Shown here: piece after piece, positions 1 through 38,480 of the stretch
Layout of the letters: each line of letters starts with the position of its first letter
Numbering within the stretch: position 1 is the first letter of the stretch
Notes under the pieces: model-generated
What the model saw: the letters and a program-made list of their open reading frames with translations, nothing else
Database searches by the model: none
What the model was told of the DNA's origin: nothing
Made by a program: the position numbers and the translations under genes
Assembly (NCBI RefSeq): GCF_030684315.1
Contig: NC_081369.1
Location: 13,678,035 to 13,742,034, forward strand
Length of the DNA stretch: 64,000 nucleotides
Source of the DNA: Stegostoma tigrinum
Lineage: Eukaryota
Reading direction: 5' to 3'

Positions 1-290
1 TCAGTATCCCGAAATCCTGAACCAGACCGTCGGCTCCAACGCGACTTTCTACTGCACCTTCCCGTTTGCTCGGGATGTGTCCAGGGTCCGGGTGAGCTGG
101 TGGAGGGACGACGAGCAGGATTTCCTCCGGGAAAAGAAGGATTCCAGGTATCACTTTGAAATCCGGAATAAAGCCAGCGCCGCCTTCCACCTCCGGGGCG
201 TGGATGTCTCCGACTCCGGGCTCTACTTCTGCCGCGTTAACAACGAGGGCAAGGTGGCGATCGGGAGCGGCACCCGGCTCCTGGTGACCG
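1..290 (+). CDS. VJ-C1 receptor gene, exon encoding a germline-joined V-J type Ig V-set domain (5' end outside window)
   Basis: Open frame from nt 2: QYPEILNQTVGSNATFYCTFPFARDVSRVRVSWWRDDEQDFLREKKDSRYHFEIRNKASAAFHLRGVDVSDSGLYFCRVNNEGKVAIGSGTRLLVT. Has B-strand Cys, C-strand Trp, DSGxYxC and J-type GxGTxLxV. Ends at a perfect phase-1 donor G|GTAAGT (290/291). Confidence 0.93.
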
Positions 291-519
291 GTAAGTCAAT
301 CCCATTTACACCCTTACCCCAACTCAGCACGGCCGGGGACGATTGCGCGAACGGGAGGCTTTTTTAATCTGAGTCAGACCCCAGGTCAGGGAGAGAGTAT
401 CCCAGGCAGGAACCTAAATCATTGCTGGCAAACTTCCTGAACCCCAGCTCCAGAGGGACAGAAGCTAGGCTGCTGGAAAAGCTCAGCAGGTCTGGCAGCG
501 TCTGTGAAGGAGAAAATAG

Positions 520-557
520 AGTTAACGTTTCGGGTCCGCTTACCCTTCCTCAGAACT
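520..557 (-). ncRNA. Minimal hammerhead ribozyme motif (Penelope-like pLTR fragment ~460-560)
   Basis: AGUU-CUGAGGA-A-GGGU(AAGCGG)ACCC-GAAA-CG-UU-AACU: 4-bp helix I, 4-bp helix II, AACGUU palindrome. Confidence 0.7.
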
Positions 558-794
558 GATTCATTCATTCAGAGGTAGTAAGAACTGCCGATGCTGGAGT
601 TAGAGATGAGACGGTCCAGTTCCGCAATGTGTTACCTGTGACCCATTCGTTCCTCTGTCTTCGAGACTGCCTTTATTTATCACCCGGGAATATTGGCCCG
701 GGGACCGAGAGACGGCGATTACCACGTGTTTCAGTCATGAGTTATTTCTCACTCCACTGCAGAGTCAAACTGGAAAACTCTCCACTAAAGCAAA

Positions 795-1415
795 ACAGAT
801 TGTAAATGAGCAAATGAAATTTTGGCATTTATTGCTCAAGGAATAGAGTGTAAAAGTGAGGAAATGTTGCCGCACCTGTACAAGGCTATAGTGAGACCAC
901 ACTCGGAGTGTTGCACAAAGTGTTGGTCTCTTTGAGGAGGGATGTAGTTGTGTCGGAGGCAGTTCAGAGGAGGTTCCCAGATTGCTTCCAGACATGAGGG
1001 GTTTGTCTTAGGGAGAGAGATTGAGCAGTTTCGGCCCATACTGTCTGGAGTTTAGCAGAATTAGAAAAGATCTAATCGAGGTGCAGAAGATGCTAAAGAC
1101 GATTGACAAAGTAGACATAGAGAGAATGTTTCCCCTTGTGGGTAAACTAGGAGAGGTTATAATTTTTGGACTGGGGTAGCAGATTTAAAACAGAACTGAG
1201 GAGCAATTACTTCTCTGAGGGTCGCGAATCTACGGGAATTCCCTACCCCAGAGTGCGACGGATGTCTGTGGCACCTAATAAATTTAAGTAGGAGACAGAA
1301 TTTTAATGATTTAATAGGTTAAAGGAAGGCAAATGAAGTTGAGGTGAAGATGAGACCAATGCTGATCATGTTGAATGCCGGAGTAGCCTCTGAATTGCTT
1401 ACTCCTGCATCTAGT
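795..1415 (+). mobile_element. CR1 3' fragment
   Basis: ctgtacaaggctatagtgagaccacactcggagtgttgc corresponds to the RT C-terminal LVRPHLEYC motif. Confidence 0.75.
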
Positions 1416-3741
1416 TTTATGACCCTCCGGACCCTGTGCCTCTGCAAAAGCCTGGGTTTTTTGGGACCACATGAGCAGGGATTGAATATCCCGGGGATGG
1501 AGAATCCCCCTGGATAACCGTCCGACGGCGCCTCTGTGCCCATTTAATCCTCATTCCAATCAGTTTACCCCTGGCTGACCATGAGTTTCTGAGCCTAGCG
1601 GACATGTAATTTTCCAGCCTTTCCCCGCAACCCTTCCCAACTTTCACTGAAAGGCAGACGAAACCGCGATTGAAATCCTGCTGAACATGAGCTGTAGCGG
1701 ATGCGCTCTTTCTCTTTAGTGTTACACGGGCGGTATGTAACACATTTACCCGGGGAGAGAGAATTAGACCTGCGAGTGATCAAACATAAACAAAAACTTT
1801 AGACTTAAAATTACTCAGTGGGGGTCTGTATTAAAATTTACAAATTCTAACATGCACATAAAATCAAACTCCATTAATTAGCGGATTCCTTTACTCGGTT
1901 ATTGCCTACAGTGAGATGGAATGGACAACAGTTGAGGGTTGTAATGAGTTAACGCAGTGACAATATTTCACAAACGCTTGGCGAGTTTATATCATTATCT
2001 CTCTTGTTTCACTTGGGTGTAATGTTGGGGCTATATTCCCTCCCCTTATACTTATATCGTCTCCCCACATCCCTATCGTCCCTCTCTTTATCCCTGTATT
2101 CTATTCCCTGACCCTATATTTCCTCCCTTTGTCACTATATTCCACCCCCCACCCTTTCTTTATCCCTTTAGTCTCCCCCCATTTCCCTGCTAGGATTTTC
2201 CATTGGGTTTAGTGACAATGGAATTGGAGGCATTTTTAGGAAGACAGTCTCATTGCACGGAAAGATCCCAGGAACGGGCCTGATCTTCCATGGGGCACTG
2301 ACCCAGGGCCGTGCTAAATGGACAGAATCCCCAGCAGGCTGAGGGCGCACTGCCATCACTGCGAATAGCCGCGGGAGGTATCTGGTCGGCGGCTGGCTCT
2401 TCCCCTGGGCTCGGAGACCTCTGCACGTTGGGACACCGGACAGCCTCCGAGCGCGGAGTTTTATCCGGGCACCGGGGCGATGCGTTGTTAAAATAGGGAG
2501 GAAAGGTTCTGGGGTGGGGGGCGTGATTGACCAATGCCGATTCTGTTTTTGGTAAAATGAGGATCTCCCATAAAACAGAACCTTCCCGTCTGCCACCTTA
2601 TTGGGAGGTAACAGTGCCCTCGGAATTTCTTCTGTACCCCACCAGCATCTGGTGTTTGTGCGGGACCCCCGCCTCGCCCCCAGCACATACTGAGAGGTGA
2701 CTGAGGACTATTGCGAGACTGGGTTGTGAGCAAGAGAAAGATGGAGTTTGTGAATGAACTGACCACAGGGTGGGTCTGTCGGGGCAAGAGAAGGAGTTAT
2801 TGAGGGATCTCCCCGTGAAGCGACGCAGATCCAAGGAAGGTGCAGCCCAGACCTGGAGCAGTGGGGAGGGTTTTGGGGGGAGGCTGGGAGCTGCAAGGTT
2901 GAGAGCGGTTTTGTGTGGGGGCTACGGAATCGGGGAGCAATGAGGTCTCACAGAAGCGCCAGCCTGAGAGCAGTTCCAAATCACTTTCACTCGGCGTGTG
3001 TCATTGATCGGGCGAAATAGATACAGGGACTGGCTGTGAAACTGCACGGGGATCCTACCATGGGGATGTTACCGTATCACCGCCCTATCGGCTGCACTGA
3101 ACCCGGAATCCAGGGCTCAGCAAACATAGGGAGTGCTGACAGCAAGAGAATGATTAAAGCACCGCTCGGTTAAATAAAGATCAAATTGGACAAACAGAAA
3201 GAATTCAGCAGCGGTGCGAAATAAAAGCACGAACTGTGGAGATCGGACCCTAATCCAACCTAGGGAAGTGCTGAAGAAACTCGGCAGGGCTAGCAACCTG
3301 TGTGTGTGTGGATTGAGTTCACATTTCCACTTCACTAGCCACTGTTCAGACTCAGAAGCAAAGCAGGCCGGTTCTATCAGCCGTAGTCAGTGCCGAAAGA
3401 GCAGAGCAAAGTGAACTCGAACCCCCACCAAAACTCCCGCTCGCTGCAGCTGTTTGGTGCCACAACAGGCTCCCATCTCCTCAGAGGGAGCGAGCTACAG
3501 GTGTAGCGGTAATCCTACACCCGGTCCGAGCTGCTCTGTAATTCCGAATTCAATATCACTCTCGTCCTTTCACGACGGCAGCATAACAGGGGCTTGTTCA
3601 GCCCATCAGCCGTGACCAAATTAAATATCCTGACCTACTCCTCGTCTCTCTTTTAGCATATTTGGTTCACACTACTCTTAACAGTTTCAATTTGTTTAAT
3701 GTCAGTTATCATTGACTAACACAGGTCTTAACAGTCATAGT

Positions 3742-3935
3742 GATAATGGGAACTGCAAATGCTGGAGAATCCAAGATAATAAAAAGTGAGGCTGGATGAA
3801 CACAGCAGGCCCAGCAGCATCTCAGGAGCGCAAAAGCTGACGTTTCGGAAGGGTCTAGGCCCGAAACGTCAGCTTTTGTGCTCCTGAAATGCTGCTGGGC
3901 CTGCTGTGTTCATCCAGTCCCACATTTTATTATCT
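3742..3935. mobile_element. Short Penelope-pLTR fold-back insertion
   Basis: Inverted arms around gacgtttcgg/ccgaaacgtc; flanking direct repeat tcttaacagtcatagt (3726-3741 and 3933-3948). Confidence 0.85.
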
Positions 3936-5340
3936 TAACAGTCATAGTTGATTAATTGCTATTTAACAGAAGTCTTAACAGTTACAATTGGTTTAATATT
4001 GATTGTTATTTGTGAAAGAAGATTTCAAATTTCCTGTGCAGAAGTATTTGTTCGCCTCATCCCTGAAAGGTTTCGTTCTAATTTGTACACCGTTACCCCG
4101 TCCTACACTCGCCAGTGGCAGTAACAGCCACTCTGTTATCAGCCTATATCTCCCAATGCCGTTAACTTCAATCACATCGCCCCCTCAGCTGCTTAGCTGT
4201 AGAGAATACAAATTTTTCCCCCCTGTCGCCGCTTCTTACAAACTAGCCCTCGGAGGCTGTAGAGGACACGTTGGTAAATGCAAACAGCATTCTGTCCCAA
4301 ACAATTCCACCATGCTCAGGACTGTTTCCAGGGACTACATCAGGGTTTAGTTTAAAGCGGCACATGAACTGGACCCAACTGTGTTCTAACAGCCAGCATC
4401 CCACGAGCCTTTTGGTTGTTTACGACATTTTAATAATTAATGTACCACTCCCAACGCCCGAAATTTCTCTGGAAGCCCCCACTGATACTCCTTAATTAGA
4501 ACAGATTCAGTTCTATCCTTTCCAGCTCCAGAGTGAACGGTTCTCAGGTTAGCCTGTATCGAAATGTGCTTCCATTTTCCCCTTAGACCACCGCTATCTC
4601 TTCGTGAAGCTATCCATTCACATTACTAACCTTTACCTTTTGGGCCATCACTGATATGCAGGCGTGGTTACCTCCTCCCCTAAGTCTGAGTTTAATCAAT
4701 CTGGTGTGCAGTGCACTCCTGTCAGTTCGATTTTCTCCTTTCCTGCCATTCGCCTAATTTTCCGATCCTTAGTCGGCGAGCGTGAACAGCCGACCGTCTC
4801 ACAGCTAGAGATACAGTCACTCAACTCCAGCCCCTGGGTTTGTGAGCGACCACAGAATTAACCCGAGCGCTTCTCAATCGCATCTGTTTTTATTTGTGAT
4901 CTAAATGTGTCGAGGCGAACAAGTGACTTTTTGAAGATTTTAGCGGCGGCCGACATATGGAGGGTGAAACTCAGGCGCTGAAACCCACCGAGTGAGTCTG
5001 TCTGAGATTAAGGGTATGTTTTCTGCTGCCTATCAGTATTCCTGAGGTTGGGAAAACAGAGAGCGGAGAGGGAAACTCCGGTATCCCAGTCTCTAAAGAC
5101 CCTCAGAGCGAGGGTATTGTCGGCGTAAACCCGGGAGAAAGTGTTCTGTGTGCATAGAAATAAAACAAAAGTCAGATTTAAACTCGCGCCGAGAGAATGC
5201 GGGTCAGACAGAGTCCTTAGAGGGATGACTCAAATGAACGTAGCAATAAAAAACAGGACAATTAAAGCTGCAATTGAACCCAATGGGATGATCCCCACTG
5301 GAAACTGACGCGACAATGATGTTGACTTTCTCTCCCCAAG

Positions 5341-5646
5341 CTTCCGCGGATTCTCCCCAGATTGTCCCGACCTTGTTTGGGAGAGAGTCCGCAATATTCC
5401 TGAGACTTGCCTGTACCTCTGGGGCCTTTCAGTCAGACGAGATCAGTATCCGCTGGTTTGTGAACGGCAGCGAGGTGCTGAGCGGAATCCGCAGCCAGGT
5501 CGAGCCGAGGCCGGACAAACGCTTCAGGGCTTCCAGTTACTTGGAGGAGAAGCAGCCCGCTCGCAATGGGACGGTGTACAGCTGCCGAGTGTCGCACGGT
5601 GGCCAGCGGGTGGAAACCCGGTACATTTACATCTCCGGTGCTGAAG
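5341..5646 (+). CDS. VJ-C1 receptor gene, Ig C1-set constant domain exon
   Basis: Acceptor ctttctctccccaag|, phase 1 to phase 1, donor AAG|GTATGG. Encodes ASADSPQIV...LRLACTSGAFQSDEISIRWFVNG...FRASSYL...GTVYSCRVSHGG...SGAE, with C1 signatures (LxC, W, YxCxVxH). Confidence 0.92.
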
Positions 5647-7012
5647 GTATGGCGTTCTCCAAGAGCTTGTTTGTGGGGTTTTTGTACCAGTCTGTCTGTT
5701 CTAATCTCAATTCCCAGCACTTGGCCCATAGCTTTGTATGCCTTAGCGTCGCATTCGTCCTCTGAACCTAGTGGGACATGAACGTGGGTTTGCTTTGTCG
5801 ACTGGCTGTACCACACACGGACATCTTTCTGTCAGAAAGGTAATGCTTGGAAGATTGGTGACCTGGTAGCTTGCTAAAGGCGATGCCATAGAAGATTGGA
5901 AAATGAAATTCAGGGTTCCCAAAGACAAAACCAGATTAATAAGCCCCTCAAAGGGAAAGTCTCCTCCAGTGCTATCTGATTTGTTCATGCTCCCTATCAG
6001 TGGCATTTCCTTGTCTGAATAAGAGCAGTTCATGGAACATGTCTTGAGGAGTTAGTGACCTGCAGCATTAACCATTTCCCACTTTGCCATCTGCCAGCAG
6101 ATAGCATGTGTAAGACCCAGTGAAATAAAACACATGTATTGTATCTTAACACAGACTTACAATCCTGACTGGCTCCTTCATTCAAAATCACTTGGGTGAT
6201 CTTCATTTTAAAACCCTTTAACTTCTATCAGCAAGTGCTTACAGCATATTTATATTCTGTGGAGAGAGAAGACCGCAAAGACCCCCAATTTTTGCTGCAG
6301 CGTTGTATTTTGGGATTGTAATGTAGACTACATTATTACACCCGTGCCTTGGGATAAAATATTTGTCAGCAAGGAAATATTTTGCCAAATGCCTGCTCAC
6401 AAACTTGATGGCTCTTAAAGGTCATTTGGGCTAACTCCTGTCACCACAATTCAGAAGTTAAAGTAGAAACTGATCAACCCGAAGTGGCGTTGATCAGTTT
6501 CAGTAGCTGTGAAAGCTGACATTGAGTGCAGCTAAATGTTAACATTAATCCTGAGTGCCTTCAGTTCTTTGAAGGGACAGAGCACAGAAAGAACAGACAG
6601 AAGCTCCTCTAGTCCAGGTCTACCACAGAGAAGGACCAACATCAATGGTGAACTTGTCCAGTCCATCAGTGGAGAAACACAGATTTGTTACAGAGGAGAC
6701 TTCTACAGTGAGTGAGGACACAGTTAGAATAGCAGAGGACATAGAAGATCAATTAAAATATTTGTCCACTACCCATTGTTCCATTGCCATCCTGACAATT
6801 TTACAAACATACATATTTCTAACCAGTAAGTATTATTTACAACTGCTACATTTACTGTCAGGATGTGGTATTGACAGATTAAATCACCTTATTGTTCAAT
6901 GTATCAGTGTTGTAGTGTATGTGTGTTGAAGTATGCATGTGTTGTATTGTTCACACATTTCCTGTGGTATGATAATGCTAACACATTGTATTTGTACTTT
7001 GAGCTTTTGCAG

Positions 7013-7126
7013 AGCCAGAATCAGGTGTTCTGCCGTGGTGGATCTATATCTGTATTGGGAGTGGGGTTTTCCTCCTGCTGCTTCTGATTATTACAATAAT
7101 ACTTTGCAAATTCTGCACGTGCAGAG
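7013..7126 (+). CDS. VJ-C1 receptor gene, transmembrane exon
   Basis: Acceptor cttttgcag|, donor GAG|GTGAGA, phase 1/1. In frame it reads EPESGVLPWWIYICIGSGVFLLLLIITIILCKFCTCR, a ~23-aa hydrophobic helix with no charged residue. Confidence 0.9.
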
Positions 7127-8089
7127 GTGAGAATACTGTACTTTGCTAAATCATTTAAATTTAGAATTTTTAATGCACTTTATTGTTAAAAGTACAATTA
7201 CAGTGAATTGAAGTGGTATTGTAGATGATTATATTTGTCTGAAATGCCTATACTCATGGATTTAAACAATCAAGTCAAAACTGAGAACATTGATCTCCTA
7301 AATTAATAAATTGGCAATTATTTTACATCATTAACAACCTCTTCAGTTGCCAGTTTGACATATGATGGAATAATTAGTCTAGTATTTCAGTCAATGCAAG
7401 GGAGACAAAAGAATGAATCACTGGCATAGATAGTTACATGTGTTGCATCAAGTATCCTGACATCACAGCTAGCACCGTGCAGTACTGCTGCCTAACTCTG
7501 TCCTATTACTGCTAGCTATGATAGAAAAAAGAGGTATGTAAAATACTGCAAGTTTGGCAGTTTGCTGCCCTGGCATCTGTAGTTATGTTGAAATCTTCAG
7601 ATAAAGCAGTATGACCTCTCCTTTCCCAAGTGTTAGATTTTCCAAGGGTCCTCAAAAATCAGTAAATTCTGCACTTAACAAATACAAAAACTGAAATGTA
7701 ACCTCATTATCTATCTGAGGAATTGATAATGGGGAAGAGGGAAATGACAGATTAAACTAATGCCATCAGATGATCTAAATTTGTGTACTGGTCCATCTTT
7801 ACCAGCTCTGCTTGTTTTGTCCTCAAAGAATTTTAGCATATTTATTAAATGTGAGATCCCTTTCACAAAAGCATGGTGACTCTGTTTGACTGTGGTAAGC
7901 TTTTGCAGAGCAAGCATCAGGTACTTTGCCAACCATTTAAAACACTATTTTAAATTGGCTTTCACAGTGGAGAACTTTATAAAAGTCCTAAAGATAACAG
8001 ATAAGCAAGGTATGGGAGGAAGAACTTTGCAACAATTTCTATCACAAGGAATAAATTATTTGAAAAATGAATGGGATTAGAATTACCAG

Positions 8090-9560
8090 GATCTGATGGC
8101 CTGCATCTGATTGATTTAGAAGAAGTGGCTACAGAGATAATAAAGATATTAGTCTAAATATTCTGGAGATTATTGGATTCTAGGAGGGTTCCAGCAGATT
8201 AATTGCTCTTGTTCAAGAAGGGAAAGAGACAGAAGGCAGGAAACTATGAATTTGTCTAACACCCTGTCATTGGGAAGATGTTACAGTTCATTCTTTTAAA
8301 AAAAGCTGGACATTTAAAATGCCTTCATACAATCAAACAGTGTCAACATACTTTTGTGAAAGGATAATCATATTTGACAAATTTGCTAGAGTTCTTTGTG
8401 AATACGACAAGCAGAGCAGATAAAGGGGAACTGGTAGATGTATTGTATTTAAATTTTTATAGGTTTTAAATTAGATGCCACATAAAAAGTTGTTGCACTG
8501 TATAGAAGCTTATGGTATTGGGAGTAATGTATTAGCATGGATTGAGGATTGGTTGACACGCTGAAGACAGAGAGTCAGGATTAACAGGTCTTCTTCAGGT
8601 TGGAAAGATGAAGATTATGAATTGTCACAAGGTTCAGTCTTAGTGTCTCAATTTTTTTATGTCCATATTGGCAAGTTGGGAAGGGGGCAGACTGTAACAT
8701 ATTGATATTTGCACATGTTACAAAAATAGATGGGAGGGTATGCTATGATGAAGACATAAGGAATAGCAAAGGAATATAAACAGGTTGAGTGAGTGGGGAA
8801 AAATGTGACCGATGGAGTTTAATGTAGGAAAGCATGAGATAAAAAACTTTGGTAAGAAGAAATAAAAGGAGAGATAATCCAAAAAAGAGCAGCACAAAGG
8901 GATTTTTATGTTCTTGTGCATGAATCCCAAAAGAATTAGCATACAGCTGCAGCAAGTAATTAAAGCAAAGATACATTTGGCCTTTATTGCTAGAAAATTG
9001 GAGTTTAAAAACAAAAACGTTTTCTTACAACTGTACAGGGTGTTTGTGAGGCCACAACTGAAGTAGTTTTGGTCCTCGTATTTAAAAAAGAGGGGTATAA
9101 ATCCTTTGGAGGCTGTTCAAAAAAGACTCATCAGGCTGATAGCTAGGTTAATGAGATTAATTTATCAAGAACAGCTAAAAAAGTTAGGGTTTTATTTATC
9201 AGAGTTTAGAAGAATGAGGGTGATTTTATTGAAACATACAAGATTCTGAGGGTCTTGACAGGTTAAATTTTGAAAAGATGTTTCCAATAGTGGGGGAATC
9301 TCAAATTAGGGAACATAGTTACAGAATAAAGAGATACTCTGGGATGCAATACAATTTTTGTCTCAGAGGATAGTGAACTCCAGTGAGTTGTAGAGGCTAG
9401 GTCACTGAAAAAGGAGGTAGAAGATTTTTGAAATATCAGAGTGAATGGAATGTTGAACTGCCCTGAAAAAGGAATTGATCCCTGGGGTAAATTATCCAAT
9501 GAACCTGTTGAATGGTGATACAGGTTTGAGGGGCTGGATGGCCTATTCTTGCTCCTTTTC
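8090..9560 (+). mobile_element. Degenerate CR1 ORF2 3' half
   Basis: RT remnants (ctagagttctttg, gtagatgtattgtatttaaatttt, ctgtacagggtgtttgtgaggccaca) ending in a CR1-like 3' UTR. Confidence 0.8.
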
Positions 9561-9961
9561 TCACGTTCTTATCATTATAATATTATGATGAGATTCATTT
9601 GATTGCCGACTAATGTTAGTTTGATTGTCATGTCTTGACCAGTACATTTTATTCTTGAGAGAGCTAATAAGAAATAATTGCTTGTAAAAAAAAATAAGCC
9701 AGTAATTAGTAGGTATCTGGTTTGAAAATACGAAGATTTTGATTGCTCAAACATGAGGGTCTGTTAAATTATATGAGACAGAGTGATGTCATACACATTC
9801 TTTGAATGGCTCCTGGATTTGATTATAACATTGGATAGTTGTGTTAATTGTTATGTCAAAGGCATTTATACATTGAAAGTCAATTTATGGTCTGTCTGAT
9901 ACTATCTGGTAGAGAATTTATTTAAAATCATATTCTTTTGAATCCATTTATTCTTTGATAG

Positions 9962-9996
9962 ACAGACGGCGAAAAGGAGAGAACAGATGTGCTCAG
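9962..9996 (+). CDS. VJ-C1 receptor gene, cytoplasmic exon 1
   Basis: Acceptor ttctttgatag|, donor CAG|GTAATT; 35 nt, phase 1 to 0. Encodes DRRRKGENRCAQ (basic stop-transfer). Confidence 0.75.
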
Positions 9997-10176
9997 GTAA
10001 TTTTTCCACTACCTCCTCTGAAATACCTTAAAAATGCAGGAAAGCATTCTTGCTGCACTGTTCCTTGGACATTCTGTCTTGGATGTTGTCTTTGTGGATT
10101 CTCTATAATCCACATTTATTGAGAGCTTCTACATATATGTATGTACTTTTAATTATTCTCCTATAGGCTGGGTTAT

Positions 10177-10328
10177 GGGCGACACAGTTGCTGAGTGCTT
10201 AGCATTGCTGCCTCACAACGCTAGGGACCCAGGCGCAGTTCCAGCCTCAGGCGACTGTCTGAGTGTAGTTTGTACATTCTCCCCGAGTCTGCCTAGGTTT
10301 CCTTTTAGTGCTCTGGCTTCCTGCCACC
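10177..10328 (+). mobile_element. HE1/V-SINE-type tRNA-derived SINE (partial)
   Basis: tRNA-like head gggcgacacagttgctgagtgcttagcattgctgcctcac, followed by the V-domain-like gtttgtacattctcccc. Confidence 0.75.
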
Positions 10329-10882
10329 ATCTACCTTTGGCCAATATCCCTTCAAACCTTTTCTGTTCATATTCTTATCCAAATGTCTTTTAATAATTGT
10401 AACTGTACCTGCATCCATCACTTTGTCTGGCAGTCCATTCCCTCCACAAACCACTATCTGGTTAAAGCAGTTGCCCCTTATGTCCTTTTTAAATATTTCT
10501 CCTTTCTCTCTCCGGTATCTTTGTTGAGGTGATACTGCAAGAAAGAATCTCCACATCATGGCCCCGATTTTAATGAGGGACTGGTGGAAATGATACACAC
10601 AAAATGCCAAAACAAGCAGCATGTTTGGTAACAATGAAGATATTGAACACAGTTAGTTGAGCTCATCCAATCCACTCCCTACCCTGCAGGTGGAAGATGC
10701 AATTCAGTGGGTTTGGGACGTGCAAACAAATATTGACAGGGAAGGTGACTGGCAGTCAGGTAAATGGTGAGGGGAGTGAAAGCATTGGGGCAAGTACAGT
10801 CTATTTCTTTGTGGGGCACAGAGGAACTCGGTATTGTCAAAGTCGATGTCTTGCCGATCTCTTTTGTACTTTTGGCTTGCAG

Positions 10883-11092
10883 CATATGCAGAAACCAGCT
10901 AACTTCAACATGGCATATACAGCTATGGACGCCAGTAGTCTTGCAAAAGATACAAAGCGCCAGCACATGGAAAGGAAAGCAGATTGTCCCCACGTCCCAC
11001 CGAGAAACCCACAGAGAAATGATGAGCATACTTATGCCACAGCACAATTCAGAAAGCAACAGGGCAAAAAGATGGGCTACACTGTGCAGTGA
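10883..11092 (+). CDS. VJ-C1 receptor gene, last coding exon (tyrosine-motif tail)
   Basis: Acceptor cttttggcttgcag|, phase 0. Encodes HMQKPANFNMAYTAMDASSLAKDTKRQHMERKADCPHVPPRNPQRNDEHTYATAQFRKQQGKKMGYTVQ*. AATAAA signals downstream at ~11732 and ~12947. Confidence 0.78.
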   Translation, partial: HMQKPANFNMAYTAMDASSLAKDTKRQHMERKADCPHVPPRNPQRNDEHTYATAQFRKQQGKKMGYTVQ

Positions 11093-13959
11093 ACACACTT
11101 CCACTGCACCAAATACAAGCAAAAAGTTGGTTCTCCAATCTTAGCTCAATGTGAATTAACGTGGCAATATAACAGCACCTATTTAAATGGTTAATTCAAA
11201 TGATAATATCTTCAATGCATTTTTTTTTCAACTCCGTCTCCTCAAGAATACCAGCTTTATGTTATAAATGGAAGTAATGAACTGATGTTAATGACAGTAA
11301 TCTCATTAGAGTTAGGTAACAATTGTCTGAATGCAGCACTCGGTAAAGGAATTGTGTAGTCTCCACAAATTAAAATCAGAAGCTGAAATTGGATTTGTAA
11401 ATTACAACAAAAATATCAAATTCTCTCGCTGACCCCTCCATTCTCCCAACATCCTTACCTCGAACAGCACAAAGTACTTTAGCAAACAAAGCAAGCACAG
11501 TAATCTCCGATGATCATTTGACAATTTTGCTGTTCTTACTTGATTGTGCAGAATTGGTAGAAAAGTTCTCAGGAAGGGTCACCCGACCTGAAACATTAAA
11601 TCTGCCTTTTCCTTCACAGATGCTGCCAGGCTGCTGAGCTTTTCCAGCAACTTTATTTTTGTTCTCATCACGGCAGTGTTACAATACTTCGGGAAAACAA
11701 ATTGTGGGGGCACACTTGAGAGTTTTCAAACAATAAAAAGAGCCAATGATTATGAGTATCACGGGGGAGTTTGTGCAGAGCCAGTAGAGAAGAATATAAA
11801 GTAAATAATGTCATTAGCTATACAAAACAAGCAAATTCTACATGAAAAGAGCAGGCAGTAAGCAAGTGCTGTTTGGATCAATTCTTTCACAGACCATGCA
11901 CAGTCTACACTAAGCTGTTTGATCTCTCAGAACAAATGAATAGCTAAGCTTAGCTCAGAATGGAACTTAACAAAACATTTTTTCAACTGAACACATTTAT
12001 TTCCACCGTTCCAACCCTGGCGCATTCAACTAAAACCCCTGTTGCCATTATCTTAATACATTGGAATGTGTTCCACGTACTGCTTGCTATATATTCATAG
12101 TGAACCACATATTTACTTGGTTTCAGATAGAATTGTACAAATTGGGAAAATAGCCATTCATGCCTTGTGTCTATGTCAGCCCTTTGAAACAGCTTTTGAA
12201 ATATTTGCACCCTTTTCTTAAATATAGCAACTATTTCTAATAATTATTTTACTTGAACTGTTACCATAGATTTTATTTGTACGCAAAACATTAGTATGTT
12301 TTAACCACCATGCTTTTATTCTGTAGAACTCATTTACTTTCTGCTCAGTTTCCTCCATTCATTAGCCTTGCCTATTTTCTGCTATCAGCTCACTTTGCAA
12401 TGTTGTTGACACAGTTACCATTTATTTCAAGAGCGCTGTCTTCCTTGGAACTGGCTAAAACTATAATTCATGAGTTGCTATACACTTCAGATTATCAGAT
12501 AGTTCCCACTGATACACACAAAACATCAATTCATTATGGGCACTACAATTACAAATGTTTTCTGGTGCAGAGGGTGAGATGGGGCATCTTACTTGTCGGC
12601 ATTGACTGACACGTGGAGAAACAATGACTGCCGAAAAAACGGGATTCTTGGGTAATAGATGCAGCAGCGGTTTTGTGTTTTAAAATTTTAATAATTAAAC
12701 TAGTTTATCCCACAGCGATCCCAGTCAGTTGGAGCAGAAATTATAATAGCACATTTGTATTTTTTTTAATTTCTATCTTCTGATCTGAATATTGAGATTG
12801 TAAATGGTTTTAATCAAATGTTATAACATTCAAAATGAGAGATTAAAGTCAGTGGTTTTGATCATTGTTCAATATGCCCTGTGCAACTGGAGCCTTCATT
12901 GTGTGAATTTTAAAAGATATCTATCTCTGCTTTGTACGTTCTGCAAAATAAAAGGTTTTATTTCTGTGTTACTTCTGGATGGAGTCACAGTTTGTAATTT
13001 TACTTTAGTTTGAATCAAATGGTAGTTAATAAACCTTAGTGCATTAGATTCATTTATTTGCATCTATATCTTCCTTAAAATGAAAATTTATTTCAGCATA
13101 AATATTATAATGATTGGTTCAAAGCTGTTTTTCTAGCCCGACAATATCTTAAAAGAGTCAAGCCTGTTTGGTAATTACAAGATTTCCTGTCCTGCAGGTT
13201 CTCATTTAGAAATTGGCGAAGGAGGGAATGGAACTGTTTACCCCAAAATATATTTTAGGAACAAAATTTGTAAAAGTGCATCACAAAACAATTCCAATTG
13301 AAAATGACAGAATTTGCAATCAAATTCAATTTGATTCAGAAAAATGTGTCCCAGGTATCACAATACAATTGTCATGGTTTTCATATTCACTGTATATTTG
13401 CAATGTCAGGAATCAGCCTGATGTGAAAACATTTCAAATTGATAATTATAGCGCATTAGGATTCAACTATTCCTCTATGAGATGGTTTGATACAATTTCT
13501 ATTCTCTTGAGGTTTACAACGCACATTGGCAGCGCCGCTTAACTGCAGATAGTGGTTTGGCTAGTTTTCACTCCATGTGCTAACAATGAGAAGTGGTGAA
13601 TGTCACTACCTTCTGGTAAAATAGCATTGGCAGTCCCAAAGAACTTCTGTGATGAGATATAACAAAGTCAGGTCAATGTGCAAAGTGCTGTGTCTGGACT
13701 GGAATTGAAAATGGCTTAGTCGCTGAGGGGTTGGTTGAAAAAGAATGCTCAGTGACTGCGCTGCTCGGTGCAAGCCCCAGGCTCTTGGGGAGGTTCAGCT
13801 GTGGCCAGCTGAAGCGGAGATCTGAAACCGTACAATCTTACCACCGACAGCCATGCTATTGCTGAATGGCTGGGCTTGGGGGAAGCTGCAGGCTGGCTGC
13901 ATCTACAATCCCCACCGGAGACATTCCCTTCAAAAATGCTGGCGTTGTCCTTGGGAGCT

Positions 13960-22711: not shown

Positions 22712-23149
22712 TCATCCCATGAAGCTCTTTATCTTGTTGTCCTTTATACCAGTCAGCTTTTGCCTTTTAGCTATACAACAATTTGTATTGCATTCTTCAA
22801 AGCCGAGGCAACGGTAACAAAACTGATGGTGGCAATTGGGACATAACACATCTGGGCAGCCACTCAGACAGTGTTGTGTTAATGTCTCACATTTGGGGCA
22901 GGCCCGCACTTTGGGGCACCCGTACACTTCACTACGTTTCTGCTTGATCGTGCCACAGCTCAGAAGCAGAGCGGTCAGGCTGCAGGATTTATTACCACAG
23001 CTATCACTCTGTCCGTCAGCATTCTTCCACTCCCTCAGACACTCCCAGCAAAACTGAAAGGATTTGTCCGATTTCTCGGAGCAAGGCAGACACTGAACAG
23101 ACAGCATCTCCGGATCCATCCTCTGCACGTACAGACTGCAGCTTGGACA
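22712..23149 (-). CDS. Atypical RBR E3 ligase-like gene, last exon (IBR + RING2/Rcat)
   Basis: Acceptor ttttgttcctcag|TGT. Encodes CPSC..CLPC..FCWEC..W..C..C (IBR), then RACPKC..SGCPDVLCPNCHHQFCYRC (RING2). Stop at 22712; total spliced ORF is 244 aa. Confidence 0.92.
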   Translation of the reverse strand, partial: CPSCSLYVQRMDPEMLSVQCLPCSEKSDKSFQFCWECLREWKNADGQSDSCGNKSCSLTALLLSCGTIKQKRSEVYGCPKVRACPKCETLTQHCLSGCPDVLCPNCHHQFCYRCLGFEECNTNCCIAKRQKLTGIKDNKIKSFMG

Positions 23150-24756
23150 CTGAGGAACAAAAGGAGAATTTGTGACATAAATGTCTATATTTATAGTAGG
23201 AATGTAAATCATAGGAATATGACATTAGACATAAAAATAGAGAATGCTATCATTGACATTTTCTCTTGTTATTCCACATTAGCCCATTGATCTAGTCTCT
23301 GATTTTGCAATGATTGGTTGCAGATAGCTCTGCCAATCTGTTAATTGTTCATAACATCATTAAAACAGGAGCTGCCTCTTCAGCCATTATAGTTGCTCCA
23401 ACATTCAATTAGATCATGACTGATCTATATCTCAACTTCATTAATCCCATAACCTCTAGAAATGTTTATTAATGAAATTTGATCAATCTCAGTCTTAAAC
23501 ACCCCAACATGCATGGTGTTTTGAAAGAGAATGGAAGCAAATGCTCTGAATTTCTATTCAGATCAAAAGTGTGACATTCTTTAGCACTTCCTGAAACTCT
23601 TCTGTTTAAAAGTCAGTATGTTTCATATTGAACTCCTTTGACATATTGTCATTGTTTACTTGATGTTTGCAAACCTGGCCATAATTCAAATATGCTTTAT
23701 TCGTTCTGTTACTCAGCTGCCTCTCTTTTTACCTCTGAACATTCTATCAGTTTAGTAATTGCTGACAAATTCCATATACACAACTGTTGCTGGCTTTATG
23801 CAAATTATCATGGATGGATCTAAATCATTTAACTTCAGCATCCTGGTAATTTAAAACCTGTGTGAGCACATATTTATAAGAAAAGAGAAGACCAGTAAAT
23901 GGACGTTTATGGAATTTGGTCACAAGTGTCACACAATGAACTCCTTATCTTATTGACTCAGTCTCTCTGACTACTGTGCTCAGCTTTTGCATTGGGAGCT
24001 ATTTAACTTACACACTGCTCATAGCTCATTGTCCTTTCTTGTTTGATGTGACTGGCCAATGAGAGGGCCTGGCCATGAGTGATTCCCACTGAATATGACC
24101 AGTTTACTCTAAGTGAGTAAATCACTCTAAGTGATTCAGAGAAAACCCGAATAGAATTTTGAGAATGAAATGTGGATCCAATAAGACCACAAAACAGTGG
24201 GGCAGAACAGGCCATTTTGCCTGCTGAGTCTGCACTTCCATTCAATGAGATCATTGGCCGATTTAATGATCTTCAACTCCACTTTCCTGCCTTTTCTTCA
24301 GAACTCCTCATTCCTTTATGATTACAAACCTGACTATTTTATCCTTGAAGATAGACCTGTTTCCATGCTGTGTTACTCTTTCGGCTCAAACTGGTCCATA
24401 TGCCCACTCAGCTAGTTCCACTTGCCTGCATTTGGTCTATATCTTCTAAACCCTTCCTATCCATGTGCCTATCCAAATGTTTTTTTAAATGTTGCTATTG
24501 TACCTGCCTCAACCACTTCTTCTGACAGCCCTTTCTATACACGCACAACTCTCTGCATGAAGAAGTTGCCCCTCAAGTCCTTCTTAATCTTTCCCCTCAG
24601 CAAGAATAGAGGAGCTGAATATTATTTAAATGGAGAATGACTGCAGGAGTACAGAACAGAACAGCCAGTTCTGATGAAGGATCCCAACTGGGAACATCAA
24701 CTTTCCTGCTCATCTGATGCTTCCTGGCCTGCTGTATTCCTCTGGCTCCAGCATCT

Positions 24757-34458: not shown

Positions 34459-37400
34459 CATAGAACATAGAACATTACAGCACAGTACAGGCCCTTCGGC
34501 CCTCAATGTTGTGCCGACTTGTCATACCAACCTGAAGCCCATCTAACCTACACTATTCCATGTACGTCCATATGCTTGTCCAATGACGACTTAAATGTAC
34601 TTAAAGTTGGCGAATCTACTACCGTTGCAGGCAAAGCGTTCCACTCCCTTACTACTCTCTGAGTAAAGAAACTACCTCTGACATCTGTCCTATATCTTTC
34701 ACCCCTCAATTTAAAGCTATGCCCCCTCGTGCTCGCCGTCACCATCCTAGGAAAAAGGCTCTCCCTATCCACCCTATCTAACCCTCTGATTATTTTATAT
34801 GTCTCAATTAAGTCACCTCTCAGCCTTCTTCTCTCTAATGAAAACAGCCTCAAGTCCCTCAGCCTTTCCTCGTAAGACCTTCCCTCCATACCAGGCAACA
34901 TCCTCGTAAATCTCCTCTGCACCCTTTCCAAAGCTTCCACATCCTTCTTATAATGCAATGACTAGAACTGTACGCAATACTCCAAGTGCGGCCGCACCAG
35001 AGTTTTGTACAGCTGCAGCATAGTCTCATGGTTCCGGAGCTCGATCCCTCTATTAATAAAAGCTAAAACACTGTATGCCTTCTTAACAACCCTGTCAACC
35101 TGGGTGGCAACTTTCAAGGGTCTGTGTACATGGACACTGAGATCTCTCTGCTCATCTACACTACCAAGAATGTTACCATTAGCCCAGTACTTTGCATTCT
35201 GGTTACTCCTACCAAAGTTCATCACCTCACACTTGTCTGCATTAAACTCCATTTGCCACCTCTCAGTCCAGCTCTGCAGCTTATCTATGTCTCTGTGTAA
35301 CCTACAGCATCCTTCTTCGCTATCCACAACTCCACCGACCTTGGTGTCGTCTGCAAATTTACTAACCCATCCTTCTACGCCCTCATCTAGGTCATTTATA
35401 AAAATGACAAACAGCAGTGGACCCAACACCGACCCTTGCGGTACACCACTAGTAACTGGTCTCCAGGATGAACATTTCCCATCAACCACCACCTTCTTGT
35501 CTTCTTTCAGCAAGCCAATTTCTGACCCAAACTGCTATATCTCCCACAATCCCATTCCTCCGCATTTTGTACAATAGCCTACTGTGGGGAACCTTATCGA
35601 ATGCCTTGCTGAAATCCATATACACCACATCAACTGGTTTACTCTCATCTCCCTGTTTGGTCACCTTCTCAAAGAACTCCAATAAGGTTTGTGAGGCGCG
35701 ACCTACCCTTCACAAAACCATGCTGACTATCCCTAATCAAATTATTCTTTTCTAGATGATTATAAATCTTATCTCTTATAACTTTTTCCAACACTTTACC
35801 AACAACTGAGGTAAGGCTCACTGGTCTATAATTACCAGGGTTGTCTCTACTCTCCTTCTTGAACAGGGGAACAACATTTGCTATCCTCCAGTCGTCTGGC
35901 ACTATTCCTGTAGACAATGACGAGTTAAAGATCAATGCCAAAGGCTCGGCAATCTCCTCCCTGGCTTCCCAGAGGATCCTAGGTTAAATCCTATCCGGCC
36001 CAGGGGACTTATCTATCTTCACACTCTGTAGGATTTCTAATACCTCTTCCTTGTGAACCTCAATCCCACCTCGTCTAGTAGCCTGTATCTCAGTATTCTC
36101 CTCGACAACATTGTTGTTTTCTAGAGTGAATACTGTCGAAAAATATTCATTCAGTGCTTCCCCTATCTCCTCTGACTCCACTCACAGCTTCCCACTACTA
36201 TCCTTGATTGGCCCTAATCTTACTCTCGTCATTCTTTTATTCCTTAAATACCCATAGAAAGCCTTAGGGTTTACCCTGATCCTATCCACCAGCAACTTCT
36301 CATGTCTCCTCCTGGCTCTTCTGAGCTCTCTCTTTAGGTCTTTCCTGGCTACCTCAAGCGCCCTAACTGAGCCTTCACATCTCATCCTAACATAAGCCTT
36401 CTTCATCCTCTTGACCAGAGATTCCACTTCCTTCGTAAACCACGGCACCCATGCTCTACAGCTTCCTCCCTGCCTGATAGGTACATACTTATCTAAGACA
36501 CACAGGAGCTTTTCCTTGAATAGGCTCCACATTTCTAATGTGCCCATCCCCTGCTGTTTTCTTCCCCATCCTATGCTCCCTAAATCTTGCCTAATCTCAT
36601 CAAAATTGCCTTTCCCCAGCTATAAATCTTGCCCAGTGGAATACACCTATCCCTTTCCATCACTAAAGTAAACATAACAGAATTGTGATCGCTATCACCA
36701 AAGTGCTCACCTACTTCCAAATCTGACACCTGGCCGGGCTCCATGCCCAGTACCAAATCTAATGTGGCTTCGCCCCTTGTTGGCCTATCTACATACTGTG
36801 TCAGGAAGCCCTCCTGCACACATTGGACAAAAACTGACCGATCTATAGTACTTGAACCATAGTGTTCCCAGTCAATATATGGAAAGCTGAAGTCCCCCAT
36901 GACAACTACCCTGTCTCTCTCACTCCTGTCGAGAATCATCTTTGCTATCCTTTCCTCTACATATCTGGGACTATTCGGAGGCCTATAGAAAACTCCCAAC
37001 AGGGTGACCTCTCCTTTCCTGTTTCTAACCTCAGCCCATACCACCTCAGTTGATGAGTCCCCATACATCTTTTCTGCAACTGTTATACTGTCCATGACCA
37101 ACAATGCCACACCTCACCCTCTTTTACCGTCTTCTCTGCTCTTACTGAAACATCTAAATCCCGGAACCTGCAACAACCATTTCTGTCCCTGCTCTATCCA
37201 TGTCTCCGAAATGGCCACAATATTGAAGTCCCAGGTACCAACCCATGCTGCAAGTTCTCCCACCTTATTCCGGATGCTCCTGGTGTTGAAGTAGACACAC
37301 TTCAAACCAACTTCTTGCTTGCCGGTGCCATCTTGCGTCCCTGAAACTTTATTTCGGGCCTTCCCACTCTCAACCTTTTCCATGCTCGAACTGCAATTTT

Positions 37401-38480
37401 GGTTCCCATCCCCCTGCTGAATTAATTTAAACCCACCCGAATAGCATTAGCAAATTTCGCCCCCAGGATATCGGTACCCCTCTGGTTCAGGTGAAGACCA
37501 TGCTGCTTGTAGAGGTCCCACCTACCCCAGAAAGAGCCCCAATTATCCAAGAATCCAAAACCCTCCCTCCTGTACCATCCCTGTAGCCACATGTTCAACT
37601 CATCTCTCTCCCTATTCCTCGCCTCACTAGCACATGGCACGGGCAACAAACCAGAGACAACAACTCTGTTCACCCTAGCTCCAAGCTTCCACCCTAGCTC
37701 CCTGAATTTCTGCCTTAAATCCCCATCTCTCTTCCTACCTATGTCATTGCTGCCAATGTGGACCACAACTTGGGGCTGCTCACCCTCCCCCTTAAGGATC
37801 CCAAAAACACGAACAGAGACATCACGCACCCTGGCACCTGGGAGGCAACACACCAACCGTGAGTCTCTCTCGTCCCCACAGAACCTCCGATCTGTCCCCC
37901 TAACTATGGAGTCCCCAATGACTACTGCTCTGCTCCTCTTCCCCCTTCCCGTCTGAGCAGCAGGGACAGACTCTGTGCCAGACACCTGTGCCCCACTGCT
38001 TTTCCCTGGTAAGTTGTGCTCCCCAACAGTATCCAAAACAGTATACTTATTGTTGAGGGGAATGGCCACAGGGAATCCCTGCTCTGCCTGCCGGTTCCCT
38101 TTCCGTCCCCTGACCGTAACCCATCTGCCTTTTTCTTGTACCTGAGGAGTGACTACCTCCCTGTAACTCCTCTCAATAACCCCCTCTGCCTCCCGAATGA
38201 TCCCAAGTTCCAACTCCCTAACGTGGTTTTCGAGGAGCTGGAGTTGGGTGTACTTCCCGCAGATGTAGTCAGCAGGGACACTAGTGGTGACCCTTACCTC
38301 CCATATTCTGCAGGAGGAACATTCAACTGCTCTGACCTCCGTTCCCATTATTCTAAATTCCCAAAGAGACTGTTGAAAAATAAAGAATAAAAGGTAAGCT
38401 TTTTAAAGATTCAAAAACAGTGATTCACTGGCTTCCCGACAGGACCCTGGTCCAAGCTCCTGCCGCTGCTGCTGCGGCAA
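34459..38480 (-). mobile_element. Near-full-length CR1 LINE (ORF1 open, ORF2 frameshifted) in RBR intron 1
   Basis: 5' UTR, ORF1 at 37422-38348, then APE endonuclease (YFNTRSIRNK, ISETW, GVFYRPP, MGDFS, SDHN) and RT (YMDFSKAFDKV, SGVPQGSVLGP, FADD) split over several ORFs. 3' tail is (TTCTATG)n. Confidence 0.95.
37422..38348 (-). CDS. CR1 ORF1p (N-terminal zinc finger/coiled coil + SGNH esterase domain)
   Basis: 308 aa with CSSC..ICGK, VVIGDSIVRG, CCLPGARV, VVHIGSNDI and GLHLN motifs. Confidence 0.88.
   Translation of the reverse strand: MGTEVRAVECSSCRIWEVRVTTSVPADYICGKYTQLQLLENHVRELELGIIREAEGVIERSYREVVTPQVQEKGRWVTVRGRKGNRQAEQGFPVAIPLNNKYTVLDTVGEHNLPGKSSGAQVSGTESVPAAQTGRGKRSRAVVIGDSIVRGTDRRFCGDERDSRLVCCLPGARVRDVSVRVFGILKGEGEQPQVVVHIGSNDIGRKRDGDLRQKFRELGWKLGARVNRVVVSGLLPVPCASEARNRERDELNMWLQGWYRREGFGFLDNWGSFWGRWDLYKQHGLHLNQRGTDILGAKFANAIRVGLN

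What the first reader, a model, noticed from the sequence alone, without database searches (positions are those of the whole stretch)
1..11092. Non-rearranging antigen-receptor-like gene: germline-joined VJ + single C1 + TM + signalling tail
Seen: five exons splice with consistent phases into an open 317-aa frame. The V exon already contains a J-type G strand (GSGTRLLVT) with a short CDR3-like loop and no RSS, and is followed by one bona fide C1-set domain. Established: a V(J)-C1 ectodomain is the layout of TCR and Ig light chains, and C1-set domains are nearly restricted to Ig/TCR/MHC/b2m/tapasin/SIRP. A VJ-C1 gene not split by RAG is the form predicted for the antigen-receptor precursor, and only a few such VJC1/NKp30-related genes are described in sharks and amphibians. 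Inference: unlike TCR chains it has no charged TM residue and carries its own long tyrosine tail, so it looks like a self-signalling innate receptor built on an antigen-receptor ectodomain, possibly an undescribed family.
Basis: partly seen in the sequence, partly recalled or inferred. Interest (0 to 1): 0.88.

Follow-up and report, generated by a model that had tools for sequence, protein, structure and literature searches.

The report
Shark NKp30-like V-C1 membrane receptor gene
This is an intact shark gene for a non-rearranging immune-type receptor (one V domain with a built-in J strand, one C1 domain, a membrane anchor and a tyrosine-bearing tail). It is one conserved member of a large cartilaginous-fish receptor family already present in public annotations, so it is not a new kind of gene.

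Summary
Five + strand exons with GT-AG borders and matching phases (1-1-1-0) give 320 codons inside the window, or 317 with an alternative acceptor. They encode a V domain ending in a J-like GSGTRLLVT strand, one C1-set domain, an uncharged TM helix and an ~90-aa tail. No other Ig-sized open frame and no RSS is present.

The "undescribed family" reading does not hold. The gene has one clear counterpart in each of eight elasmobranch species (whale shark 84-100% per exon; skate 49%). It sits inside a large chondrichthyan VJ-C1-TM family that NCBI auto-names SIRP-, NCR3-, tapasin- or Ig-lambda-like. Outside cartilaginous fish its V is closest to amphibian NKp30 (NCR3) V domains. A paper I could not read (Kinlein 2021) describes shark NCR3-family genes.

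This lineage lacks canonical ITIM, ITSM or ITAM motifs. It keeps two tyrosine motifs and a PxxPxR site, and its TM segment is the most conserved part.

No RNA run was available, so the junctions rest on orthologues. The scan's first-stage notes list this stretch three times and similar genes on other DNA of this genome.

Verdict: real gene, new member of a known kind, moderate interest.

The parts
1..290 (+). V(J) exon, cut by the window edge; the reading frame starts at base 2. It has the two Ig cysteines, the WW motif, DSGLYFC, a short CDR3-like loop and the J-like G strand GSGTRLLVT. It ends in phase 1 at donor G|GTAAGT.
   Evidence: (V-set 2.7e-9). No RSS heptamer or nonamer.
291..5340 (+). 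Intron 1, about 5 kb, with no Ig-like open frame.
5341..5646 (+). C1-set domain exon, phase 1-1, 306 nt. It carries YSCRVSH and ends ...ISGAE at donor G|GTATGG. A weaker in-phase donor lies at 5637|5638.
   Evidence: (C1-set 7.8e-10). 'SGAE' is conserved in the orthologues.
7004..7126 (+). Stalk, TM and juxtamembrane exon, 123 nt, phase 1-1. It reads ...EPESGVLPWWIYICIGSGVFLLLLLIITIILCKFCTCR. The helix has no charged residue. An alternative acceptor at 7013 removes 3 codons.
   Evidence: (97.6% identity to whale shark), and 85 (most conserved segment, 79% mean pairwise identity).
9962..9996 (+). 35-nt mini-exon, phase 1 to 0, encoding the basic stretch (D)RRRKGENRCAQ.
   Evidence: (11/11 residues identical to whale shark).
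10883..11092 (+). Last coding exon: 69 codons plus TGA. It holds tyrosine motif 1 (NMAYTAMD), a PxxPxR site (PHVPPR), tyrosine motif 2 (HTYATAQF) and a C-terminal GYTVQ.
11093..11737 (+). Presumed 3' UTR. The first poly(A) signals are at 11369 and 11595 (ATTAAA) and at 11732 (AATAAA). The true end is unknown.
   Evidence: There is no RNA evidence.

Best explanation
The window holds all exons downstream of the leader of an intact, non-rearranging IgSF receptor gene of an orectolobiform shark closely related to the whale shark.

The protein is a type I membrane protein. From outside to inside it has: an NKp30-like V domain whose G strand is a built-in J (GxGTxLxV), one C1-set domain, a short stalk without cysteine, an uncharged but very conserved TM and juxtamembrane segment (PWWIYIC-GSG...CKFC), and a disordered ~90-aa tail.

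It represents one elasmobranch lineage, seen once in each of eight species. That lineage sits inside a large chondrichthyan VJ-C1-TM family, many of whose other members carry SIRP-alpha-like ITIM tails.

Shown here: the gene structure, the domain identities, orthology, family placement and the conservation pattern.

Inferred: the V domain binds a conserved, probably host-encoded ligand, because the gene stays single-copy and recognisable from skates to sharks. Signalling would run through phosphorylation of two conserved tail tyrosines and an SH3-binding PxxPxR site. The first tyrosine motif, MxYTx[MVIL], is ITIM-like but not canonical. The second is xYA(T/S)P. The TM segment may also mediate association with a partner. 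Whether the signal is inhibitory or activating is open; I lean weakly (about 40%) to inhibitory or modulatory.
For: - Exon structure and phases.
- Pfam V-set and C1-set.
- Whale-shark orthologue maps exon for exon at 84-100%.
- Eight orthologues at 49-74% identity to the whale-shark protein, each species with one gene in the hits.
- C1 tree: orthogroup supported 100*, with the window next to whale shark.
- V tree: the chondrichthyan family is one clade (97*) against the amphibian and reptile NKp30-like V domains chosen as outgroup. The window's shark group has 88 support, with the skate sequence unresolved beside it.
- The best non-chondrichthyan V hits include Xenopus proteins that UniProt names NCR3.
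- Solved human NKp30 is the structural match with the highest sequence identity in the list (31%, Z 13.4). NKp30 also aligns over the full V exon at 3.7e-4.
- AF2 model: both Ig domains at pLDDT 86-97, a TM helix and a disordered tail.
- TM and juxtamembrane segment is the most conserved part, 79% against 60-64% for the Ig domains.
- Tail motifs.
Against: - No transcript evidence for this species. All four runs holding the DNA are genomic.
- The leader exon is outside the window.
- The link to NKp30 rests on modest scores (E about 1e-7 to 1e-10 for multi-V amphibian proteins; 3.7e-4 to the solved NKp30). The outgroup in the V tree was chosen from the best hits, so it is not an independent test.
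- A full-length profile scores Ig lambda light chains (1.6e-13) and SIRP-alpha (2.5e-12) about equally.
- Structure search ranks B7-family V-C ectodomains first (Z about 15).
- Tail motifs are not canonical. Tyrosine 1 is lost in the skate, and the Pro of motif 2 is Ala in this window.
- The homodimer test gave no answer.
Confidence: 0.75

Rival explanations
1. It is a true shark SIRP: a homologue of tetrapod SIRP-alpha/beta/gamma that has one C1 domain instead of two and would engage a CD47-like ligand and SHP phosphatases.
For: - NCBI names many family members 'tyrosine-protein phosphatase non-receptor type substrate 1-like' or 'SIRP gamma-like'.
- The orthologue profile hits solved SIRP-alpha at 2.5e-12 and SIRP-gamma at 2.9e-11.
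- SIRP clusters are among the nearest in the protein atlas.
- Paralogues carry alternating xTYAxLxL and xEYAxxQ-type motifs. From my own knowledge, these resemble the SIRP-alpha tail.
Against: - Only one C1 exon is present and there is no room for another.
- This lineage has no canonical ITIM.
- No protein of SIRP-alpha length and layout appears among the 150 best V hits, whereas NKp30-type V domains do.
- Ig lambda chains score as well as SIRP.
- The automatic names are inconsistent: SIRP, NCR3, NCR3LG1, tapasin-related, Ig lambda, TCR beta, CD276.
Confidence: 0.12
2. It is a B7/butyrophilin-type ligand (V-C ectodomain, TM, tail), such as a B7-H6-like molecule, and not a receptor.
For: - The best two-domain structural matches are PD-L2, PD-L1, B7-H6, B7-H3, butyrophilin and B7-1, at Z 14-15 over 184-200 residues.
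- NCBI names some paralogues 'NCR3 ligand 1-like' or 'CD276 homolog'.
Against: - Z values of many unrelated V or V-C chains lie within 1-2 units, and the V-C angle is only a model.
- By sequence the V is nearest to NKp30, CD79b and TCR V domains, with a J-like GxGTxLxV strand.
- Foldseek ranks Ig light chains and TCR first.
- Pfam calls the second domain C1-set and gives no C2-set_2 match.
- Paralogues carry ITIM tails typical of receptors.
Confidence: 0.06
3. It is a direct relic of the antigen-receptor precursor, or a germline-joined Ig light-chain or TCR-like chain.
For: - The V(J)-C1 layout matches.
- Ig lambda light chains are the top contiguous sequence and Foldseek matches.
- C1 hits include Ig lambda C, MHC and UrIg2.
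Against: - Identity to light chains is only 20-24%.
- The V has only about 14 residues between the C-strand Trp pair and the conserved Arg (sequence), which leaves little room for a C'' strand. It also lacks the Phe/Trp before GxG.
- The stalk has no cysteine for an interchain bond.
- TM and tail exons are present, unlike IgL.
- UrIg and UrIg2, with MHC or AgR-complex linkage and closer V and C relationships, are the published candidates.
- The homodimer test gave no answer.
Confidence: 0.05

Closest known systems
NKp30 (NCR3), including the shark NCR3 family of Kinlein et al. 2021 (Immunogenetics 73:333; not readable here)
   Same: Both have a non-rearranging single-exon VJ-type V domain with a GxGTxLxV G strand. 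The best non-chondrichthyan V hits are amphibian NCR3-named proteins. Identity to solved human NKp30 is 31%. A Pristis family member is named NCR3-like by NCBI.
   Different: Tetrapod NKp30 has no C1 domain. From my own knowledge, it has a TM arginine for pairing with CD3-zeta or FcR-gamma. This gene has a C1 domain, an uncharged TM and its own tail. I could not check whether it is one of the eight published nurse-shark genes.
SIRP-alpha/beta/gamma
   Same: Both have a VJ-type V followed by C1-set domain(s) and a TM with a tyrosine tail. The profile hits SIRP-alpha at 2.5e-12. Paralogues have SIRP-alpha-like ITIM tails.
   Different: This gene has one C1 instead of two. Its lineage has no canonical ITIM, and its V is not closest to SIRP V domains.
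PRARP (Fu et al. 2019, chicken and other bony vertebrates)
   Same: From my own knowledge, PRARP shares the V(J)-C-TM-tail layout of a non-rearranging IgSF gene. It is listed with NKp30 and SIRP among joined-VJ genes.
   Different: No PRARP sequence was available, so the relationship is untested. PRARP is described from bony vertebrates.
UrIg and UrIg2 (shark non-rearranging antibody-like genes)
   Same: They are shark genes with a single-exon VJ and C1 domains. UrIg2's solved chain is among the C1 hits (4.7e-7).
   Different: UrIg and UrIg2 have three to eleven C domains, and UrIg2 forms homodimers. They map to the MHC or the AgR complex. This gene has one C1 and an NKp30-like V.
B7 family (B7-H6, PD-L1/2, butyrophilins)
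   Same: Both have a V-C-TM-tail layout. B7 members are the top two-domain structural matches (Z 14-15).
   Different: As far as I know, B7 V domains lack the J-like strand. By sequence this V is nearest to NKp30, TCR and CD79b V domains.
Ig lambda light chain (including shark germline-joined clusters)
   Same: Both have a V(J)-C1 ectodomain. Lambda chains are the best contiguous PDB and Foldseek matches.
   Different: Identity is 20-24%. This gene has TM and tail exons, no C-terminal cysteine, a compact V, and one-per-species conservation instead of clusters.

Membership tests
Chondrichthyan VJ-C1-TM receptor family (auto-named SIRP-, NCR3-, tapasin-related- or Ig-lambda-like) | Leader, single-exon VJ domain, one C1-set domain, TM and cytoplasmic tail | tested here: met
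   The leader exon is outside the window but is present in orthologue P0163.
Chondrichthyan VJ-C1-TM receptor family (auto-named SIRP-, NCR3-, tapasin-related- or Ig-lambda-like) | V and C1 each group with family members in trees | tested here: met
   V tree: family clade 97*. C1 tree: orthogroup 100*.
NKp30 / NCR3 | Non-rearranging VJ-type V domain in one exon with a GxGTxLxV G strand | tested here: met
   (GSGTRLLVT, no RSS).
NKp30 / NCR3 | V domain closest to NKp30 V domains among proteins of other vertebrates | tested here: inconclusive
   Amphibian NCR3-named and similar proteins are the best non-chondrichthyan hits, and identity to solved NKp30 is 31%. The E-values are modest, and TCR-alpha and CD79b score as well on parts of the domain.
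NKp30 / NCR3 | Ectodomain of one V domain only; charged TM residue for ITAM adaptors (the mammalian form) | tested here: not met
   A C1 exon is present and the TM is uncharged. The shark NCR3 family may differ from the mammalian form; that paper was not readable.
NKp30 / NCR3 | Linkage to the MHC | not tested
   The window shows only an IBR-domain gene and repeats. An unchecked scan note places an NKp30-like gene beside C4 on another piece.
SIRP | V-C1-C1 ectodomain | tested here: not met
   There is a single C1 exon and no further Ig-sized open frame.
SIRP | Four tail tyrosines forming ITIMs that recruit SHP-1 and SHP-2 | tested here: not met
   This lineage has no [ILVS]xYxx[ILV] motif. Paralogues do.
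SIRP | Binding to CD47, or orthology at the SIRP locus | not testable with these tools
   No binding assay is possible and no chromosome-scale synteny is available.
UrIg / UrIg2 | VJ followed by three or more C1 domains | tested here: not met
   One C1 only. UrIg architecture is taken from PMC12227049.
Ig light chain (germline-joined) | V-J-C with no TM, a C-terminal cysteine, and close identity to IgL isotypes | tested here: not met
   TM and tail exons are present. Identity to light chains is 20-24%.
TCR chain | Charged TM residues and a connecting-peptide cysteine | tested here: not met
   The TM is uncharged and the stalk has no cysteine.
PRARP | Sequence grouping with chicken PRARP genes | not testable with these tools
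   No PRARP sequence or paper was available.

The most novel reading that the evidence does not exclude
This elasmobranch-wide, single-copy lineage may be a receptor that has not been described and is distinct from the eight published nurse-shark NCR3 genes. It has an NKp30-like VJ, one C1, an unusually conserved uncharged TM, and a tail without a canonical ITIM. It could preserve the ancestral VJ-C1-TM form from which tetrapod NKp30 arose by loss of C1, and to which the SIRP-like ITIM receptors are related. It might signal through a TM-associated partner that is still unknown.
Probability: 0.2. Interest if true: 0.6.

Novelty: new member of a known kind. Interest (0 to 1): 0.4.

Why it matters
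Non-rearranging VJ-C1 genes bear on how Ig and TCR arose, so each lineage in cartilaginous fish adds a data point. This one shows that an NKp30-like V is joined to a C1 domain in a gene kept as one copy in each species examined, from skates to sharks. That is unusual for NK-type receptors, which usually evolve fast, and it points to a conserved ligand. The value is comparative. It does not displace UrIg and UrIg2 as precursor candidates, and the family is already visible, under misleading automatic names, in public annotations.

Tried and rejected
- RNA evidence. All turned out to be genomic contigs covering introns at even depth, so no splice junction could be tested.
No orthologous loci, leader exon structure or synteny could be fetched.
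- Homodimer test of the whale-shark ectodomain: no answer. This is evidence neither for nor against pairing.
- Word-indexed protein searches returned only chondrichthyan family members. They say nothing about SIRP, PRARP or IgL relatives.
- The joined spliced protein of the window was never sent to any tool. Exons were searched one by one by reference, and the whale-shark orthologue P0163 served as the full-length proxy.
- Papers not held: Kinlein 2021 (PMC8273117), Flajnik 2012 (PMC3709836), Ohta and Flajnik 2015 (PMC4594805), Ohta 2019 (PMC6761025), Flajnik 2023 (PMC10530332). Fu 2019 (PRARP) did not turn up in any paper search. Whether this exact gene is already published therefore remains open.
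- Rejected: germline-joined IgL, TCR chain, three-domain SIRP, pseudogene. All five exons are open and conserved.
- Neighbouring IBR-domain open frame: no solved relative, so it gives no synteny anchor.

Full report
**What is in the sequence**

Reading the + strand of 1-11092 gives five exons with canonical borders:
- The V exon (2-290) is cut by the window edge and ends at G|GTAAGT.
- The C1 exon (5341-5646) ends at G|GTATGG.
- The TM exon (7004-7126) ends at G|GTGAGA and has a second possible acceptor at 7013.
- The mini-exon (9962-9996) is 35 nt.
- The last exon (10883-11092) ends in TGA.

Phases are 1-1-1-0. The sum is 963 nt, which is 320 codons plus stop.

Pfam calls the first exon V-set (2.7e-9) and the second C1-set (7.8e-10). 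The PDB and the protein atlas agree. The C1 exon has the YxCxVxH signature.

The V exon runs without interruption through a J-like G strand (GSGTRLLVT) into the splice donor, and no RSS heptamer or nonamer lies in 1-700. No other Ig-sized open frame exists on the + strand up to 13 kb, and tblastn finds no second V or C1 in the 64 kb. There is therefore exactly one V and one C1.

**Support for the gene model**

No RNA could be brought to bear.

The model rests on orthologues instead. A whale-shark protein (P0163, 350 aa) maps to exactly these five exons at 84-100% identity per exon. Seven further elasmobranch proteins share the same layout. They come from Hemiscyllium, Chiloscyllium, Heptranchias, Cetorhinus, Heterodontus, Scyliorhinus and the skate Leucoraja.

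The conserved 'SGAE' after the C1 domain supports the 5646 donor over the in-phase alternative at 5637. The choice between acceptors 7004 and 7013 stays open.

Full-length work used P0163.

**What family it belongs to**

A full HMMER search with the V exon gave one close representative (Heptranchias, 66% identity). Below it came dozens of 220-400-aa proteins at 35-46% identity with the V at the N-terminus. All that I looked up are from sharks, rays or chimaeras.

NCBI's automatic names for them are 'tyrosine-protein phosphatase non-receptor type substrate 1-like', 'SIRP gamma-like', 'NCR3-like', 'NCR3 ligand 1-like', 'tapasin-related', 'Ig lambda-1 light chain-like', 'TCR beta chain-like', 'CD276 homolog' or 'uncharacterized'. 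The inconsistency shows that no curated family name exists for them.

Trees built separately on V and C1, with the window's exons as separate rows, gave the following:
- The chondrichthyan V domains form one clade (97*) against the best non-chondrichthyan hits.
- Inside that clade sit the window's own lineage, a tyrosine-free group sharing the PWWIY TM start, and a large ITIM-rich group of 51 rows.
- On C1 the window's lineage, including the skate, is supported at 100* on a long stem, with the window next to whale shark.

The gene is thus the counterpart of one gene seen once in each of eight elasmobranch species. No chimaera member of this lineage appeared among the hits.

**Relation to known families**

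The best V hits outside cartilaginous fish are amphibian and reptile proteins with NKp30-type V domains. Among them are Xenopus proteins that UniProt names NCR3. Solved human NKp30 aligns over the whole V exon (3.7e-4). In the wide structure search it has the highest sequence identity of the listed matches (31%, Z 13.4).

Between the C-strand Trp pair and the conserved Arg there are only about 14 residues (the sequence, and the strands). This leaves little room for a C'' strand or a CDR2-like loop. A skate IgNAR V domain is the best single-domain structural match (Z 14.8).

A profile of the eight orthologues scores Ig lambda light chains (1.6e-13), SIRP-alpha (2.5e-12), SIRP-gamma (2.9e-11) and TCR-gamma (4.7e-10) about equally. 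Foldseek ranks light chains and TCR first at 20-24% identity. The wide structure search ranks B7-family V-C ectodomains first (Z 14-15), with many unrelated chains within 1-2 Z units. Beyond the NKp30-like V, the ectodomain is about equally distant from IgL, TCR, SIRP and B7.

It fails defining features of:
- SIRP (two C1 domains, ITIMs)
- mammalian NKp30 (V only, charged TM)
- UrIg and UrIg2 (three or more C domains)
- IgL (no TM)
- TCR (charged TM, stalk cysteine)

**Literature**

Joined-VJ IgSF genes are a recognised set: CD79, NITR, SIRP, CD8, NKp30 and PRARP (PMC11599192). VJ-C1 genes are discussed as relics of the antigen-receptor precursor (PMC10751288). UrIg and UrIg2 are the published leading candidates (PMC12227049).

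PMC12227049 also lists eight nurse-shark 'NCR3 genes' (MT914154-914161). These come from Kinlein et al. [quoted passage not shown] That paper and several others were not held. I could therefore not check whether this lineage is one of those eight, nor whether they carry a C1 domain. I found no paper in the held library that describes the VJ-C1-TM family as such.

**How it probably works**

The AF2 model of the orthologue shows a signal helix, two confident Ig domains (pLDDT 86-97), a TM helix and a disordered tail.

The tail of this lineage has no canonical ITIM, ITSM or ITAM. It keeps:
- a first tyrosine motif, M(A/V/T)YT(A/D)x-D. It aligns with the first ITIM-like motif of the paralogues, is lost in the skate, and reads NMAYTAMD in the window.
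- an invariant PxxPxR site (PHVPPR)
- an invariant second tyrosine, (V/I)YA(T/S)P, which reads HTYATAQ in the window

The most conserved part of the protein is the TM and juxtamembrane segment, at 79% mean pairwise identity against 60-64% for the Ig domains. It has invariant WWIY and GSG residues and flanking cysteines. This suggests an interaction within the membrane even though the helix carries no charge.

From this I infer a receptor for a conserved, probably host-encoded ligand. It would signal through tyrosine phosphorylation and an SH3 ligand site, and possibly through a membrane partner. None of this is shown, and the sign of the signal is open.

The TM exon is 123 nt in phase 1-1, so skipping it stays in frame. 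NCBI predicts such an isoform in Scyliorhinus (P0166).

**Context**

The rest of the window gives no synteny anchor. It holds:
- an IBR-domain open frame on the minus strand at 22.7-23.2 kb with no solved relative
- retroelement-like open frames (by eye)
- a weak PLL-domain frame at 57.1-57.5 kb
- an assembly gap

Unchecked first-stage notes of this scan list further VJ-C1-ITIM genes 3.5, 3.6 and 10.9 Mb upstream on the same piece and more on other pieces. They also list an NKp30-like gene beside C4 on another piece.

**Verdict**

It is wrong on novelty of the family and overstated on the antigen-receptor-precursor angle. I class this as a new member of a known kind, with a real chance that it is already described. 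Interest is moderate.

Noticed in passing
window 9971: Run X1 (sample S1) reads A where the window and the other three runs read G. This is the second base of a CGA codon in the mini-exon and would give Arg to Gln (RRRK to RRQK), so it may be a coding polymorphism between individuals.
   Followed up: partly
window 6720: All four genomic runs read G where the window has A. The site is in intron 2.
   Followed up: no
window 5692-5887, 8240-9610, 10200-10590: These intron stretches have contig depth of hundreds to about 2000, against 10-20 elsewhere, with many loose ends and joints. They are high-copy repeats.
   Followed up: no
window 22712-23212 (-): A Cys-rich 166-aa open frame matches the IBR domain (PF22191, 2.5e-6) and has no solved relative. 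It is probably the last exon of the RBR-like gene that another scan note reports at 22.7-40.8 kb.
   Followed up: partly
window 34548-38348 (-): A run of long minus-strand open frames (136, 183, 90, 121, 176, 89 and 308 aa) looks like a reverse-transcriptase-type retroelement by eye. I ran no domain search on it.
   Followed up: no
window 61898-62986: This is an inverted duplication. Identical 169-aa and 133-aa open frames lie on opposite strands, and two near-identical frames carry a GIY-YIG-like stretch. It is probably two Penelope-like element ends facing each other.
   Followed up: no
window 57061-57531 (+): A 156-aa open frame has a weak, sub-threshold match to the PTX/LNS-like (PLL) domain (5.3e-4, 20.6 bits against a cut-off of 25). 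It may be an exon of an adhesion-GPCR-like gene.
   Followed up: no
window 54915-55045: A run of N, meaning an assembly gap or a masked stretch. Left as it is.
   Followed up: no
P0166 (Scyliorhinus torazame isoform X2); window 7004-7126: NCBI predicts an isoform that skips the TM exon and keeps the frame. The window's TM exon is 123 nt in phase 1-1, so the same soluble form is possible here.
   Followed up: partly
P0013, P0014, P0015, P0151, P0152, P0185: A sister group of VJ-C1 proteins in rays, bamboo sharks and the elephant shark mostly shares the PWWIY..C TM start with this gene. Their tails are basic and essentially free of tyrosine.
   Followed up: partly
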